Below are positions 480-7,355 of a stretch of 64,000 nucleotides of DNA, piece by piece. Both the position numbers and the translations under genes were made by a program. The DNA is from Octopus sinensis (taxonomy: Eukaryota), in assembly GCF_006345805.1 (NCBI RefSeq), contig NC_043004.1, positions 79,236,001 through 79,300,000 on the forward strand, in the 5' to 3' direction. The stretch's first letter is position 1. Each line of letters opens with the position of its first letter. The notes under the pieces are model-generated. The model did not search any database, was not told where the DNA came from, and saw only the letters and a program-made list of their open reading frames with translations.

Positions 480-626
480 CCTGGTGAGAGAGGAGCTACT
501 GGTGAGCCTGGGCCTACAGGACCCCAAGGACCCCCTGGTATACCAGGAATGCCAGGACCTGCAGGTGTTACTGGACCAAGAGGACTTCGGGGACAAACAG
601 GAATGCCTGGCATGCCAGGACTACCG
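480..626 (+). CDS. FACIT (collagen IX-like) collagen, exon encoding the end of COL2 ([10 protein letters not shown]...GMPGLP); upstream exons lie outside the window
   Basis: Pro + 16 perfect Gly-X-Y triplets; pyrimidine tract and AAG acceptor at 477-479; GTTTGT donor at 627; 147 nt, phase 0/0, in frame with the next exon. Confidence 0.88.
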
Positions 627-963
627 GTTTGTCAGAAAATATTGTATTTATTTAACTATTTAATGCAATATTAACAATTACATTTCAACTTGCTTTTTCA
701 TCAATCATTTCTCAAATCATTCTTCAATCATTAACATCTGGAATGGCTTCTTTAATCATCATAATGATTTATATATTTTTTTCATAGATTATAGATTCCA
801 TTAAAAAATAAGCGATAAACACCGAGTAACGTATAAACTTTATTAAGCCTCGAGATATTAACATGAAAATATCATTGTCGAAAAACACTGACCTAGAATT
901 TGTCAATGTGCTAATTAATCGCTTAGCACTAATAATCTTATGATTCTTCTAAATCTCAGTTAA

Positions 964-2211
964 CCCTTTTCTTACCACATTTCTGTTGAAATAATACACT
1001 GCCTTTGTTTCAATCTATTAAAGTGCTAATGATAGATTCCTGTGGTGTAAAAACTCTGTCGCGATGTGGAGAAGAGATAGTAAAAGTATGTGTGCGTGTA
1101 TGTGTATGTGTGCGATAGAGAGAGGGGTGGGGAGATGGATTTAAATTAATGCTACAGTCGCGTACATACATACATGCGCACATATGAACGCTGTTGGTAC
1201 ACGCAAACATTCAAACACACAGATGACAAATAGGTGTGTGTGTGTGTATGTGTATGAGTGCGTGTGTGCGCGCGTGTGTATATGTGTAAGAGCAAAGGGT
1301 GTGAGTATATGCCTTCACGCCGAGGTCGACTTTGCCTTTCATCCTTTCAGGGTCGATAAGTTAAGTACCAGTTGCGTACTGGGATCGATCTAATCGACTA
1401 CCCCCACCTTCCCCCAAATTTCGGGTCTCGTACCTAGAGTAGAAAAGTATATGTTTACACGCCATTGACGTTTATATGTGTGAGAATGCGTTTGTGTGCC
1501 AATTCTATAATATCAAACACTTCTTAAATATTTTATTACCAAAACGCAGTTTGGTGTGTTACTGTGAACAGTGATCGTGGGGCACGACTGTGAGAGCTGA
1601 AACGAAGGAGGTAGGGAAAGATTAAGAGGAAGAGTGAAGACAAGAAATAGAAGTTAGGAATAAAGAGAAGAGAATTAAGAGTGATGAAAACGTATAAACT
1701 CAGAAGGAAAGGAATGGAATTAATAATGCAAGGAACGGAACTAGAAGGTGTCGTGTGATAAACAGCAAAGCTGAAGCTAAAAGGGAGAGAATGAGAAATA
1801 TAGAGAGAGAATGCAAAATATGAACGATGATGAGAGACAAGAATATTTTGTAGCAGCCAGAATAAGAAAACTGGTTAGAAGAAAAAATGTGATTGGTGAG
1901 AATTGACAAGATTTCTCAGAAATTAATCAAAAGATTATGAAAGATATAAAATGATATTATGACAGAGTGAGTGATATGCTTATGGCTGACACTCTACCAT
2001 AAACTGTAGCATGGTATTTCCATGGGTACTGCTAGTTAATTTTTGCAAATAGTAAAGAATTCAGTGTAGTAATTTTGCTGTTATTAAACTGGTGTTTGAA
2101 ACATAAATTAACAGGGAATTTTGATGGAAGTCTTTAATTAAAATCATATTAAAATGGGGAACTTATATTATAGAACTAGATTCAGTTTCGAGCAGATTGG
2201 TATCAAAAGGG
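964..2211. mobile_element. piggyBac-like MITE split by a ~1 kb insert (SINE + microsatellites)
   Basis: TTAA-CCCTTTTCTTACCA at 960-977 and TGGTATCAAAAGGG-ATAA at 2198-2215 form imperfect TIRs with a degenerate TTAA target. Confidence 0.45.
1318..1446 (+). mobile_element. tRNA-derived SINE family A, 5'-truncated
   Basis: GAGGTCGACTTTGCCTTTCATCCTTTC...TAAGTACCAG...ATCGACT core shared by >10 copies in the window. Confidence 0.75.
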
Positions 2212-2859
2212 ATAAAAAGATTAATTCTAAAATGTAATTCACAAATTCTTTACAATGTACCTCTTGAGACATCCCGAAACATTTCTGTAAGTTTTTCTTT
2301 TTCCACCTTCTTATCATTTTTTAGAATTTTTTTTACAATGTGGTTTTACTCTGATTCTTAAAAACATTCTCCAAAACTAATTCATTAATTAAACAATTTA
2401 CTTCTCAACAAGTTCTGCTTTATTTCAGTTATATTAAATTCTTAGGACTCATTAAAGCTATAAAGCAACTGACTAGCTCAAACTCTTCTGCTTTTTGTAA
2501 TAAAGGGTTTTTCTCCATAAACATTACATCCACTTTGAATTGGCTTAATCCTCTTCAATCTAACATTTACATAAGCACAATTGTCAACATCCTTGCATGC
2601 ACCCATACGCCTTATAAGCACAGGGATGTAAGCATTCAGATTTGCATTATATCTACTTAGACACAGTTTACTCTGTCACTGTAGGTGCAGTATGGGCAAA
2701 TAGTTAAGAAGTTAGTTCTAAAACCATGAGGTCTCAGTTCAATTCCACTGCATACATCTTGGGCAAATATCCTTTTCAACAGCCTTGGATCAATCCATAT
2801 TTTGTATGTGAAACTGGCTTGGTAGAAACTGTAGAGAATCCCCTGTGATTCAGAAAGTA

Positions 2860-3270
2860 CCCCCTTGTCAGGCATATTATGCCATGCTGATTCAGCCTGA
2901 GGATTACTTTAAGGGTACACGTAAAAGACACTTGTGCTAGCCCCACATAAAAAAGCACTTGTGCTGGTGCCACACAAAAAAGCACTTGTGCTAGCCCCAC
3001 ATAAAAAAGCACTTGTGCTGGTGCCACATAAAAAAGCTCTTGTGCTGGTGCCACATAAAAAAGCTCTTGTGCTGGTGCCACATATAAAGTGCCCAGTACA
3101 CTCTGTAAAGTGGTTAGCATCAGGAAGAGCATCCAATCATAGAAACCATACTGGAACAGACAATTGGAGCCTGGTGTGGCTCCTGGGCTTGCCAGCTCTT
3201 GTCAAACCATCCAATCCATGCCAACTTGGAAAATGGATATTAAATGATGATAATGATTATGATGATGATG
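2860..3270 (+). mobile_element. RTE-LINE 3'-UTR-type repeat (family C) with 5 x 27-bp tandem units at ~2930-3080
   Basis: Unit cacttgtgctggtgccacataaaaaag; ends in ccaacccatgcc...ttaaatgatgat tail as at 56060-56455. Confidence 0.75.
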
Positions 3271-3669
3271 TACATATGTCTGTGGTATACTTAGCCACTT
3301 ATTTGTTAATTCAAGAGCAGATGGTTCAGTTGATCAGACAACTGGATCTTCGTTGCAGAATGACAGAGATCCACCATCACTGTTCTCCTTTGTGATTTTA
3401 TATTTGAATATATTTGAATATATTTGCATAAATAAATTTAGAAATAAACAAACAGATAAACATTTAAAGTCATAAAAACATTTTAAAAAAAGAAATTGAT
3501 ATACAAGCAAAAGAGAAACTGTTTTTTTTTTTTTTTAAGTATCTCATGTTTAAATGTGAAGGAATGAGATATAAACAGACTTTGGTAAAACTAAAAGAAA
3601 GAAAAACTCTCAAAAAGCCATTGAAACCAACAGTGTCTTCAACAAAATTGACATTTCCTTCTCTTTCAG

Positions 3670-3724
3670 GGTCGAAGCATTGCAGAAAATGAGATACGTC
3701 AACTTGTTTACCGAATTCTAAGAG
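3670..3724 (+). CDS. FACIT collagen, NC2 exon (GRSIAENEIRQLVYRILR-E)
   Basis: ctctttcag acceptor, GTGAGC donor, 55 nt, phase 0/1; resembles collagen IX NC2 (e.g. GKEASEQRIRELC in alpha3). Confidence 0.9.
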
Positions 3725-4239
3725 GTGAGCAATTAAAAGACAATTATTTTAATGTCATAAGGAAACTTACCATAATTTCATCTCTGGTTATCTTCTTTAG
3801 AACATCTATTTATATATTTATTTATATATCAATTTACTAATTTGTTTTGAAATTTTCCTAAGGTCAAATTAATTATGTATTTCAAAAACTGCATTTTCTA
3901 AATTTTTGCTTTCTAAAAATATTTCAAATTTAGACTTTCATTTCATTTTGTTGCCTGAAGGATTAGATTAAAATCATAACTCAAGTTTTGTGCCCTAATG
4001 CCCTCACTACTATTAAAATAACTAATTGCAATATAAATAATTGGATTAATAATGAGCCAAAATAAGGCACATCACTTCTAGGAATCAGCCAAAAATTGAT
4101 AAAACAGTTGGTCAGGACATTTTTGACTCAAATTCTAGGACTTGTAGGACTGGTTACCTGGTTTCCGTGACATACAAGTGACTGACATCACAACATTCCC
4201 CTGGATTGGGTCCCAGTCGGTCACAAGGTTACTCATATA

Positions 4240-5914: not shown

Positions 5915-6160
5915 AGGCACAGGAGTTGCTGTGTTAAGTAACTTGCTTACCAACCACATGGTTCTGGGTTTAATCCCACTGCATGGCACCTTGGCAAGTG
6001 TCTTCTACTATAGCCTTGGGCTGAACAAAGCCTTGTGAGTGGATTTGGTAGATGGAAACTGAAAGAAGCCCATTGTGTGTGTGTGTGTCTCACCACCGGT
6101 GCTGGTTTGTCTACATCTTTGTAACTTACCAGTTTGGCAATAGAGACTGATAGAATAAAG
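5915..6160 (+). mobile_element. SINE family B (tRNA-like head + CCTTGGGCAAGTGTCTTCTACTATAGCC core) in a collagen intron
   Basis: A/B-box-like head and shared core. Confidence 0.75.
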
Positions 6161-6178
6161 ACCACGCGAATAAAGATA

Positions 6179-6598
6179 AGGTGGCAAGCTGGCAGAAACG
6201 TTAGCATGTCAGGCAAAATGCTTAGCGGTATTCCGTCTGCCACTACATTCTGAGTTCAAATTCCATCGAGGTCGACTTTGCCTTTCATCCTTTCGGGATT
6301 GATTAAATAAGTACCAGTTACGCACTGGGGTTGATATAATCGACTTAATCCATTTGTCTGTCCTTGTTTGTCCTCTCTGTGTTTAGTCCCTCGTGGGTAG
6401 TAAAGAAATAGGCATTTCATCTGCCATTACATTCTGAGTTCAAATTCCACCGAGGTCGGCTTTGCCTTTCATCCTTTCAGGGTCGATAAATTAAGTACCA
6501 GTCGTGCACTGGGGTCTATGTAATCGACTTAATCCGTTTATTTGTCCTTGTTTGTCCCCTCTGTGTTTAGCCCCTTGTGGGTAATAAAGAAATAATAA
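6179..6598 (+). mobile_element. Two tandem SINE family A copies (full + 5'-truncated) in a collagen intron
   Basis: Core repeated at ~6240-6410 and ~6420-6598. Confidence 0.8.
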
Positions 6599-6919
6599 TA
6601 AAGACCAGGCTTAAAAAGAAAAGTATTGAGGTGGATTCGTTCTACTAAAAACTCCTCCAAGTAAAAGATAAAAAATAAGTTTGTTGAAATATTTAAAGAA
6701 GGATTTTGCTGGAATTCAAAGGAGAAACTGGATGATGAAGCAAAACCTTTATGTATGATTAATAGCCAAGTATTTCATTTTTATATTTGATTTGCAAGAT
6801 TCTTGATGTGAACTTGTATGTTGAAACAGGTTTTGTTGTATCTTGGGAGGGTCAGTATGCCAATAATATACACATAATGGTTCTATTTCACTTCCTTTGT
6901 CAGTAGTAGTAGTAGTAGA

Positions 6920-7095
6920 TGGTGAGCTGGCAGAATCAGATGTTTACATTCTGAGTTCAAATCCTGCCAAAGTCGACTTTGCTGTTCATCCTTTCAAGAT
7001 TGATAAAAATTACCACTCAAATACTGGTGAAGATGTAATCAATGAACCCCAACCCCCTAAAATTGCTGGCCAGGCCTTGTGTCAAAAAATAGAAT
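6920..7095 (+). mobile_element. SINE family A, diverged
   Basis: ggtgagctggcagaatc head and gtcgactttgc core. Confidence 0.7.
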
Positions 7096-7158
7096 TATTA
7101 AAGGAATATATTTTATTAAAATTAAAAGAATTTTTTGTTTTCTGTTTTGTTTTCCTAG

Positions 7159-7355
7159 GTCCTCCTGGACCAGTTGGTCCTTCCGGTGTTGGTCGCCCTG
7201 GAGAAAGAGGTTTACATGGACCTCCAGGATCTCAAGGTCATAGAGGAGCCCCAGGTCTGCCTGGTCCTCCTGGATATTGTGAATATTGTAACTTTGCTGC
7301 ATCAGGCCCTGAATATTTCCCATTAAATAGAAGGAATGCTATCAAGGGACCTTGA
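7159..7355 (+). CDS. FACIT collagen, terminal exon: end of COL1 + NC1 (GPPGYCEYCNFAASGPEYFPLNRRNAIKGP*)
   Basis: tttcctag acceptor, G-V-G imperfection, two Cys at the COL1/NC1 junction, C-terminal IKGP as in collagen IX alpha2/XXII, TGA at 7353-7355. Confidence 0.95.

What the first reader, a model, noticed from the sequence alone, without database searches (positions are those of the whole stretch)
480..7355. Collagen IX-like FACIT collagen gene in a probable cephalopod, with vertebrate-like exon architecture
Seen: six exons splice into a 222-aa open frame, COL2 - NC2 (28 aa) - COL1 (~117 aa) - NC1 (two Cys, ends IKGP*). Recalled knowledge: the 3' coding exons of human COL9A2 run 33/147/55/189/78/terminal. 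Here they are 147/55/(102+90=192)/78/terminal, so one extra intron splits the 189-bp exon. The 147-bp exon also starts on a Y-position residue, as expected after a 33-bp exon. The G-T-G and G-V-G imperfections fall where collagen IX has its two COL1 imperfections. Inference: this is a true orthologue of the ancestral FACIT/collagen IX gene. FACITs are mostly discussed as chordate proteins and collagen IX as a cartilage protein, and cephalopods have cellular cartilage.
Basis: partly seen in the sequence, partly recalled or inferred. Interest (0 to 1): 0.88.

Follow-up and report, generated by a model that had tools for sequence, protein, structure and literature searches.

The report
Octopus FACIT collagen gene, 3' end
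The window holds the last six coding exons of a real, single-copy fibril-associated (FACIT) collagen gene of an octopus whose exon layout matches vertebrate collagen IX and XXI genes almost base for base, which shows this collagen class predates the protostome-deuterostome split but does not make it collagen IX specifically.

Summary
Six AG/GT-bounded exons (147/55/102/90/78/197 nt) splice into a 222-aa COL2-end/NC2/COL1/NC1 frame. Every checkable prediction held:
- A 33-bp phase-0 exon ending Gly-X lies 1 kb upstream, preceded by 36- and 72-bp exons.
- A TSPN/LamG exon set lies about 230 kb upstream on the same strand.
- The recalled vertebrate exon sizes were verified on a lizard COL9A2 and a bird COL9A1 locus.
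- Both COL1 imperfections sit in the same alignment columns in all FACITs compared.

The interpretation needs narrowing. The same exon cassette occurs in fish COL21A1, two other vertebrate FACITs and a tick gene, so it marks FACITs in general, not collagen IX. The "extra" 102|90 intron is shared with the tick, and two vertebrate FACITs have an intron one base away, so it is probably ancestral. The tree places octopus in a well-supported protostome clade (arthropods, a nemertean) that is unresolved against IX, XVI and XXI. The gene is single-copy, which argues for a homotrimer. Its NC1 carries CX2C, not the vertebrate CX4C, as already reported for echinoderms. Similar arthropod proteins are already named "collagen IX-like" in databases. 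Verdict: a new member of a known kind, of moderate interest.

The parts
480..626 (+). 147-nt exon, end of the COL2 triple helix. It starts on a Y-position Pro and ends in phase 0.
   Evidence: It has the same size, phase and Y-position start as the 147-nt exon of lizard COL9A2, bird COL9A1, fish COL21A1, a frog FACIT, a chimaera FACIT and a tick FACIT.
3670..3724 (+). 55-nt exon, first half of NC2 (GRSIAENEIRQLVYRILR), phase 0 to 1.
   Evidence: The intron falls at the same NC2 residue and phase as in collagen IX alpha1 and alpha2, collagen XXI and the tick gene. NC2 aligns without gaps to the solved collagen IX NC2 (5CTD, E 0.0015 with only 42 aa).
5015..5116 (+). 102-nt exon, second half of NC2 plus the start of COL1, including the first G-X-G break (GVG).
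   Evidence: The tick gene has an identical 102-nt exon, as does an unidentified Logan contig, L052.
5262..5351 (+). 90-nt COL1 exon, phase 1 to 1.
   Evidence: The tick gene has an identical 90-nt exon. A frog and a chimaera FACIT have a 91-nt exon whose 5' intron lies one base away.
5623..5700 (+). 78-nt COL1 exon carrying the conserved G-X-G imperfection (GLT-GT-GRI).
   Evidence: All six other genes mapped have a 78-nt exon at this point. The imperfection falls in the same alignment columns in all 16 FACITs of alignment A1.
7159..7355 (+). Terminal coding exon: the end of COL1 with the second conserved imperfection (GPS-GV-GRP), the GYCEYC cysteine pair, NC1 ending KGP, and the TGA stop.
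   Evidence: It is the only copy in the 2.72-Gb genome (self-match E 2e-35; all other matches are generic triple helix). The first polyadenylation-type hexamers downstream are at 8573 (ATTAAA) and 8644 (AATAAA); their use is not shown.

Best explanation
The window's first 7.4 kb is the 3' end of one very long gene (at least 238 kb, at least 35 exons found) on contig C8 of an octopus genome. The gene encodes a FACIT-class collagen.

Reconstructed layout (the N-terminus is incomplete):
- a TSPN/LamG-like domain;
- a Cys-x3-Cys junction;
- a triple helix of about 123 aa, then a PSSSS break;
- a helix of about 189 aa, then a one-triplet Gly-to-Ser break;
- a helix of about 210 aa (COL2);
- NC2, 28 aa;
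- COL1, 119 aa with three G-X-G breaks;
- NC1, 25 aa, with a CX2C pair and a C-terminal KGP.

It belongs to a protostome clade of FACIT genes (arthropods, a nemertean). That clade descends from the same ancestral gene as vertebrate collagens IX, XVI and XXI and the other FACITs mapped here, so it is a pro-orthologue of several vertebrate types rather than of IX alone.

Its C-terminal cassette, 72/36/33/147/55/102/90/78/terminal, probably preserves the ancestral intron set. Vertebrate IX and XXI lack the 102|90 intron. A second vertebrate group lacks the NC2 intron.

Inferred mechanism, not shown here:
- Three identical chains are selected and put in register by the alpha-helical NC2 domain, as shown for collagens IX and XIX.
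- The COL1 helix is locked by interchain disulfides at the COL1/NC1 cysteine pair.
- COL1 and COL2 lie along the surface of fibrillar-collagen fibrils, while the N-terminal helix and the TSPN domain project outward as an interaction arm.
For: Gene structure:
- The six window exons are confirmed.
- Twenty-six upstream collagen exons of 33-108 nt (54, 45, 63, 72, 36, 33, 60, 108), all phase 0, lie on the same strand with no assembly gaps.
- TSPN exons lie at C8:79005435-79005567, 79006311-79006533 and 79026278-79026451. Their intron phases match the tick gene, and they score Pfam Laminin_G_3 E 2e-5, the same level as a frog FACIT.

Homology:
- With residues 500-691 of the draft as query, the best database hits are arthropod 'collagen alpha-1(IX)-like' proteins (E 1e-52 to 1e-37), then vertebrate XXI, XXII, XVI and IX.
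- PDB collagen IX alpha1 (9wxp_CJ) matches at E 1e-23 as a single stretch across NC2.
- NC2 alone matches 5CTD without gaps.
- COL1 aligns without gaps across 16 FACITs, with both imperfections in the same columns and a shared C-terminal KGP.

Intron positions:
- Five introns (33|147, 147|55, the NC2 intron, |78 and 78|terminal) are shared in position and phase with vertebrate IX and XXI and with the tick gene.
- The 102|90 intron is shared with the tick and with contig L052, and lies one base from the 177|91 intron of two vertebrate FACITs.

Phylogeny: the protostome clade has 98/99 support, and the split between {IX, XVI, XXI, protostomes} and the other vertebrate FACITs has 99/96.

Copy number: the NC1 and NC2 exons are unique in the genome.

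Literature: NC2 is the trimerisation and chain-selection domain of collagens IX and XIX (Boudko 2008 and 2010, as cited in PMC7034273). Echinoderm FACITs have only a TSPN domain and a GXCXXC site (PMC10381214).
Against: - No transcript evidence could be obtained, so every junction is inferred from sequence and cross-species conservation.
- A 66-kb intron separates the two halves. A congener's gene model (P0241) stops there, so one transcript spanning both halves is an inference. It rests on phase compatibility and on arthropod and nemertean proteins that carry both halves.
- The strict FACIT motif GXCXXXXC is not met (CX2C).
- Octopus NC2 lacks the Cys found in arthropod NC2 and in collagen IX alpha1 and alpha3 NC2.
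- Homotrimer formation, fibril association and tissue of expression are untested.
- The tree rests on 177 columns, about a third of them invariant Gly, and cannot resolve the deep order.
Confidence: 0.8

Rival explanations
1. The gene is specifically the orthologue of vertebrate collagen IX. On this view IX retains the ancestral FACIT form and the octopus protein plays a IX-like role on cartilage fibrils.
For: - The octopus run 72/36/33/147/55 is identical to lizard COL9A2. XXI and the two other vertebrate FACITs mapped have an extra 45-nt exon between 36 and 33.
- The domain set is TSPN only, with no VWA or FN3, as in alpha1(IX).
- NC2 is 28 aa against 30 aa in IX, and lacks the extra CxxC insert of XXI-type NC2.
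- The AU test does not reject protostomes plus IX as a clade (p 0.21).
Against: - AU equally fails to reject protostomes plus XXI (p 0.36) or plus XVI (p 0.52).
- HMMER ranks XXI well above IX.
- The gene is single-copy, against the three-chain heterotrimer of IX.
- The helix lengths upstream of COL2 differ from IX: 123+189 aa and 210 aa, against 137 and 339 (the IX figures are from memory).
- NC1 has CX2C, not CX4C.
- If the vertebrate FACITs arose by duplication after the split, no single type can be 'the' orthologue.
Confidence: 0.12
2. These are two adjacent genes, as in the congener's annotation: an upstream TSPN-collagen gene ending near window -129,500, and a separate short collagen gene that supplies COL2, NC2, COL1 and NC1.
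For: The only database model for this locus in a close relative (P0241, 1122 aa) ends by reading through the donor of the exon at -129,565..-129,512. The next exon is 66 kb away.
Against: - P0241 is visibly a poor model, with many read-through, non-collagen stretches.
- The exon at -129,565 has a good GT donor in phase 0, and the next exon at -63,661 starts with Gly in phase 0.
- No start codon, signal-peptide exon or TSPN is seen for a downstream gene.
- Arthropod and nemertean homologues carry TSPN and the C-terminal module in one chain.
Confidence: 0.05
3. The gene is an unexpressed relic (pseudogene), or a non-FACIT short-chain collagen that resembles FACITs by convergence of Gly-X-Y sequence.
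For: There are no transcript data. Collagen repeats give inflated similarity scores: in the PDB search collagen I outscored collagen IX, and the profile search was dominated by long collagens.
Against: - All exons found are open with canonical splice sites.
- The non-collagenous NC2, NC1 and TSPN parts match FACITs specifically.
- Six intron positions and phases are conserved across phyla, which composition alone cannot produce.
Confidence: 0.03

Closest known systems
Vertebrate collagen IX (COL9A1, COL9A2, COL9A3)
   Same: - The C-terminal exon cassette 72/36/33/147/55/.../78/terminal, with identical intron phases.
- The NC2 length and an ungapped NC2 alignment to the solved structure 5CTD.
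- A COL1 of about 115-119 aa with two imperfections at the same positions.
- A TSPN-only N-terminus, as in alpha1(IX).
- A C-terminal KGP, as in alpha1(IX).

   Different: - One gene rather than three, so probably a homotrimer.
- The 183-189-nt exon is split 102|90.
- CX2C rather than CX4C at the COL1/NC1 junction.
- No Cys in NC2.
- Different COL2 and COL3 lengths.
- A third G-X-G break at the start of COL1.
- The tree does not single out IX.
Vertebrate collagen XXI (COL21A1)
   Same: It is the best-scoring vertebrate family for the NC2-COL1-NC1 module (E 1e-45 to 1e-33). A fish gene has the same 33/147/55/195/78/terminal layout and phases. NC1 ends KGP.
   Different: XXI has an N-terminal VWA domain, an extra 45-nt exon, a longer NC2 with an internal CxxC, and CX4C in NC1.
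Predicted arthropod 'collagen alpha-1(IX) chain-like' proteins (Ixodes hexagonus P0121, ant P0122, beetles P0123, P0150 and P0160, mites P0143 and P0157) and a nemertean protein (Tubulanus P0263)
   Same: - Same clade (98/99), with 47-57% identity over the C-terminal module.
- Same NC1 motif: GYCE-x-CN ... KGP in most arthropod members, with variants (a beetle GRCEFCD, the nemertean GTCSGCY).
- Same third imperfection.
- Same TSPN, and the same CxxxCPxG start of the helix.
- The tick gene has the identical 33/147/55/102/90/78 exon series and the same TSPN intron phases.
   Different: The octopus chain has about 520 aa of triple helix before NC2, against about 150-250 in insects. Its gene is far larger (at least 238 kb), and it lacks the NC2 cysteine.
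Echinoderm and hemichordate FACIT ('collagen IX' of Dolmatov and Nizhnichenko 2023, PMC10381214)
   Same: A single FACIT gene per genome, a TSPN-only N-terminus, and GXCXXC instead of GXCXXXXC.
   Different: I did not have those sequences, so neither identity nor intron positions were compared.

Membership tests
FACIT collagens | Several triple-helical (COL) domains separated by short non-collagenous (NC) domains | tested here: met
   The draft chain parses as helices of 123, 189, 210 and 119 aa, separated by PSSSS, SGK and a 28-aa NC2.
FACIT collagens | A conserved COL1 domain of about 100-120 aa with two imperfections at fixed positions | tested here: met
   COL1 is 119 aa. It aligns without gaps to 16 FACITs, and both imperfections share columns with IX, XVI, XXI and the arthropod proteins.
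FACIT collagens | Two cysteines at the COL1/NC1 junction in the pattern GXCXXXXC | tested here: not met
   Octopus has GYCEYC, that is CX2C. So do the other protostome sequences aligned here (arthropods, the nemertean and P0285). The same variant, GXCXXC, is reported for echinoderm FACITs (PMC10381214). Two junctional Cys are present; only the spacing differs.
FACIT collagens | An NC2 domain homologous to the trimerisation domain of collagens IX and XIX | tested here: met
   A 42-aa query matches 5CTD chain A without gaps at E 0.0015 and hits nothing outside collagen IX. The intron falls at the same NC2 residue and phase. Trimerisation itself cannot be tested here.
FACIT collagens | An N-terminal TSPN (LamG-like) domain | tested here: met
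   Three exons upstream on the same strand match the tick TSPN (E 6e-10 and 9e-14). Pfam Laminin_G_3 scores 25 bits, just under the curated cut-off of 27.6, the same level as a frog FACIT.
FACIT collagens | The shared 3' exon cassette (33/147/55 or fused/.../78/terminal) | tested here: met
   Exon homology among vertebrate FACIT genes was already noted for XIX against alpha2(IX) (Khaleduzzaman 1997, via PMC7034273).
FACIT collagens | Association with the surface of fibrillar-collagen fibrils | not testable with these tools
   This needs immuno-EM or cross-link mapping.
Collagen IX specifically | A heterotrimer of three distinct chains from three genes | tested here: not met
   The NC1 and NC2 exons occur once in the 2.72-Gb assembly. 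All other hits are generic Gly-X-Y. The search scores only the best candidates, so very divergent paralogues could be missed.
Collagen IX specifically | Groups with COL9A1-3 to the exclusion of other FACIT types | tested here: inconclusive
   The protostome clade sits in a polytomy with IX, XVI and XXI. AU p-values are 0.21 (IX), 0.36 (XXI) and 0.52 (XVI). XII, XIV, XIX and XX were not sampled under those names.
Collagen IX specifically | COL2 of about 339 aa and COL3 of about 137 aa (figures from memory), and a glycosaminoglycan site in the NC3 of alpha2 | tested here: not met
   The octopus helix lengths are 210 aa and 123+189 aa. Glycosaminoglycan attachment cannot be tested.
Collagen IX specifically | Expression in cartilage | not testable with these tools
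   No expression data could be reached. No paper on this was found in the library.

The most novel reading that the evidence does not exclude
The octopus and tick genes preserve the intron set of the FACIT gene of the last common bilaterian ancestor, with both the NC2 intron and the COL1 intron. The vertebrate FACIT subfamilies are then differential-loss derivatives of that set. The single cephalopod FACIT would be the fibril-surface collagen of cephalopod cartilage, so a fibrillar-plus-FACIT fibril design would be part of a matrix toolkit inherited by vertebrate and invertebrate cartilages rather than a chordate invention.
Probability: 0.3. Interest if true: 0.7.

Novelty: new member of a known kind. 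Interest (0 to 1): 0.45.

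Why it matters
Widely cited reviews of matrix evolution list FACIT collagens among deuterostome, chordate or vertebrate innovations (PMC3002383, PMC3308698, PMC4448552). A 2023 review extended them to echinoderms. Here a mollusc gene, a tick gene and a nemertean protein carry the full FACIT signature, and the two genes whose loci were mapped (octopus and tick) share six intron positions with vertebrate FACIT genes. 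That places the family, and its C-terminal exon cassette, in the last common ancestor of protostomes and deuterostomes.

The intron comparison also gives a simple explanation for why vertebrate FACIT subfamilies differ at two introns: each lost a different one.

For cephalopod biology it provides a concrete candidate to test in cranial and funnel cartilage, a tissue often compared with vertebrate cartilage. The claim should stay modest, because automated annotation already labels many arthropod homologues 'collagen alpha-1(IX)-like', so the proteins are in the databases even though I found no paper that discusses them.

Tried and rejected
The signal-peptide exon and the TSPN-tail exon were therefore not read.
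- Four protostome gene loci (ant P0122 and P0125, beetle P0123, nemertean P0263) are not on record. The tick is the only protostome comparison with a full locus.
- A word-index search with the TSPN region returned only the congener's own poor model, P0241. It gave no molluscan breadth.
- The profile search of 1.8 billion representatives was dominated by long generic collagens. Only about a dozen true FACITs could be picked out, by whether the match spanned the whole profile at the C-terminus.
- The phylogeny could not resolve IX against XXI against XVI.
- Literature searches for cephalopod collagen IX or for protostome FACITs found nothing relevant. The J Cell Sci 2018 collagen review is not held.
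- Rfam found nothing in the window.
- A non-FACIT short-chain collagen and a pseudogene were considered and rejected on the NC2, NC1 and TSPN matches and on intron conservation.
- The tick's annotated 54-nt exon between the 36- and 33-nt exons is non-collagenous in every frame and looks like an annotation or assembly problem, so I did not count it as a difference.

Full report
**1. The observation.**
- The exons are 480-626 (147 nt), 3670-3724 (55), 5015-5116 (102), 5262-5351 (90), 5623-5700 (78) and 7159-7355 (197 with TGA).
- Every acceptor is a pyrimidine tract plus AG, and every donor is GT(A/G/T).
- The sum is 669 nt, giving 222 aa, with intron phases 0,1,1,1,1.
- The product is a COL2 end (49 aa), NC2 (RSIAENEIRQLVYRILRERLEDLTADLK, 28 aa), COL1 (119 aa to the first Cys) and NC1 (CEYCNFAASGPEYFPLNRRNAIKGP, 25 aa).
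- COL1 has three G-X-G breaks, not two.
- Chance is excluded. In 264 kb, every run of five or more Gly-X-Y triplets except one poly-Gly run lies on the + strand and the minus strand has none. Every run examined is bounded by AG/GT.

**2. The rest of the gene.** The window is G000:C8:79236001-79300000 of a 2.72-Gb assembly in 13,516 contigs. That size matches the published Octopus sinensis genome (PMC12564688).

I fetched 200 kb upstream and found 26 more collagen exons on the same strand. Coordinates below are relative to the window, with negative values upstream.
- Closest to the window are a 33-nt exon (-545..-513, GQPGQNGPAGM, phase 0, ending Gly-X), a 36-nt exon (-3534) and a 72-nt exon (-5195).
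- Next come exons of 63, 54, 54, 45, 54 and 54 nt, out to -63,661.
- After a 66-kb intron come sixteen exons from -129,565 to -175,696.
- The exon that opens the helix lies at -181,214..-181,155 (KKPKCNIVCPRGKPGINGTD).

A search of the whole genome with a tick TSPN domain found three exons further upstream on the same strand (C8:79005435-79005567, 79006311-79006533, 79026278-79026451). Their intron phases match the tick gene. Pfam Laminin_G_3 scores E 2e-5. The gene therefore spans at least 238 kb.

A congener's model (P0241) shows that the tail exon exists (FDLQWMVLHCDYRKAARETCSEIP), but that model is poor and stops at the 66-kb intron.

**3. What it resembles.**
- With the NC2-COL1-NC1 module as query, the best hits are predicted arthropod proteins named 'collagen alpha-1(IX) chain-like' or 'XXI' (tick, ants, beetles, mites; E 1e-52 to 1e-37).
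- After these come vertebrate collagen XXI in bulk, then XXII, XVI and IX.
- Among solved structures, collagen IX alpha1 of a cartilage fibril (9wxp_CJ) matches at E 1e-23 as one stretch running through NC2.
- NC2 alone (42 aa) matches the collagen IX NC2 structure 5CTD without gaps at E 0.0015, and matches nothing outside collagen IX.
- In an alignment of 16 FACIT C-terminal modules, COL1 is gapless. Every third column is an invariant Gly, the two classical imperfections fall in the same columns in all sequences, and NC1 ends with a shared KGP.
- The two junctional cysteines are CX2C in all protostome sequences and CX4C in all vertebrate ones. The CX2C form has been described for echinoderm and hemichordate FACITs (PMC10381214).

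| Gene | Exon sizes (nt), 5' to 3' |
|---|---|
| Lizard COL9A2 | 72/36/33/147/55/183/78/176 |
| Bird COL9A1 (partial) | 33/147/55/189/78 |
| Fish COL21A1 | 72/36/45/33/147/55/195/78/188 |
| Frog FACIT (P0229) | 72/36/45/33/147/177/91/78/197 |
| Chimaera VWA-FACIT (P0278) | 72/36/45/33/147/177/91/78/248 |
| Tick Ixodes hexagonus | 72/36/(doubtful 54)/33/147/55/102/90/78/209 |
| Octopus | 72/36/33/147/55/102/90/78/197 |

- In the lizard and bird records the annotated 139-nt exon is a mis-call. The collagen frame and a gtaagt donor 8 nt downstream give 147 nt.
- The recalled vertebrate sizes are therefore right and the match to octopus is real, but the cassette is FACIT-wide rather than specific to IX.
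- The 102|90 intron is shared with the tick in the same phase, and with an unidentified short-intron organism (contig L052: 102 | 168 | terminal).
- The frog and chimaera genes have an intron one base away and lack the NC2 intron.
- Protostomes thus carry the union of the two vertebrate patterns. The most economical reading is that both introns are ancestral and were lost differentially. A one-base slide or an independent gain in the second vertebrate group cannot be excluded.

**5. Phylogeny.** The tree uses 29 C-terminal modules and 177 columns (IQ-TREE, LG+C20).
- Octopus falls in a protostome clade with arthropods, the nemertean Tubulanus and an unnamed JGI protein (support 98/99).
- A 99/96 split separates {IX, XVI, XXI, protostomes} from the P0278/P0229-type vertebrate FACITs.
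- Inside the first group the order is unresolved.
- AU tests reject none of protostomes plus IX (p 0.21), plus XXI (0.36) or plus XVI (0.52).
- The data therefore support a pro-orthologue of several vertebrate FACITs and neither support nor exclude a special tie to IX.

**6. Copy number and likely mechanism.** The NC1 and NC2 exons occur only once in the genome, so there is no alpha2 or alpha3 partner. By analogy with collagens IX and XIX, where NC2 selects and registers the chains (Boudko 2008 and 2010, cited in PMC7034273), I infer a homotrimer. It would be nucleated at NC2 and locked by disulfides at the COL1/NC1 cysteine pair. COL1 and COL2 would lie on fibrils of fibrillar collagen, and the long N-terminal helix plus TSPN would project outward. 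These steps are inference; nothing here tests assembly, localisation or expression.

**7. Novelty.** Several reviews list FACITs as deuterostome, chordate or vertebrate innovations, and echinoderm FACITs were described in 2023. I found no paper on protostome FACITs or on a cephalopod collagen IX gene. From memory only, immunochemical reports of a type IX-like collagen in Sepia cartilage exist. Automated annotation, however, already names the arthropod homologues 'collagen IX-like'. The finding is a correct and well-read new member of a known family. Its useful evolutionary points are the bilaterian age of the exon cassette and the ancestral status of the 'extra' intron. It is not a new kind of system.

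Noticed in passing
window 1320-1440, 6180-6400, 6420-6600, 6930-7080: The introns of the collagen gene hold several copies, in the same orientation, of a short interspersed element (core ...GTCGACTTTGCCTTTCATCCTTTCAGGGTCGATAA...TACCAGT...). A different repeat at window 160-260 has dozens of copies across many contigs at 81-95% identity.
   Followed up: partly
window 2925-3080: A tandem array of about five copies of a unit of roughly 27-30 nt (CCACATAAAAAAGCACTTGTGCTGGTG) inside intron 1. It creates a spurious 156-aa open frame.
   Followed up: no
window 32119-32670 (-): An open frame with a Pif1 helicase 2B domain (Pfam PF21530, E 1e-14). It is probably a fragment of a Helitron-type or Pif1-like mobile element downstream of the collagen gene.
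   Followed up: partly
window 29843-31624 (-): A 593-aa stop-free frame, Asn- and Ser-rich, with no Pfam match. Its C-terminal part (…YIGATTSKLSQRISNHYSTF…) recalls GIY-YIG nuclease motifs of Penelope-like elements (from memory, untested).
   Followed up: partly
L030 18064-18210 and L031 2440-2586 (lizard COL9A2, bird COL9A1 records): The deposited gene models translate the 72, 36, 33 and 147-nt collagen exons in the wrong frame and end the 147-nt exon 8 nt early (139 nt). The proteins P0013 and P0041 therefore carry about 110 and 57 residues of nonsense before NC2.
   Followed up: yes
P0241 (congener model) against window -129,565..-129,512: The only database protein for this locus in a close relative is a 1122-aa model full of read-through intron sequence. 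It stops at the 66-kb intron, so the FACIT C-terminus is not attached to it in that annotation.
   Followed up: partly
L052 (Logan contig SRR10153341_32644) 69-741: An unidentified organism with very short introns, seen in 141 cluster members from many sequencing runs, has a near-identical NC1 (GYCEYCNFA). It has a 102-nt exon followed by a fused 168-nt (90+78) exon, so it has lost the 90|78 intron but kept the 102|90 one.
   Followed up: partly
L033 47576-47629 (tick gene): The annotated 54-nt exon between the 36- and 33-nt exons encodes no Gly-X-Y in any frame. The middle of the tick model (residues about 460-700) is also non-collagenous junk, which suggests annotation or assembly errors there.
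   Followed up: partly
window 4670-4790, 5411-5465, 7880-8000, 62580-63560: There are long (TA)n, (TC)n and (TG)n/(TA)n microsatellites. The last kilobase of the window is almost pure TA/TG-rich simple sequence with strong GC skew.
   Followed up: no
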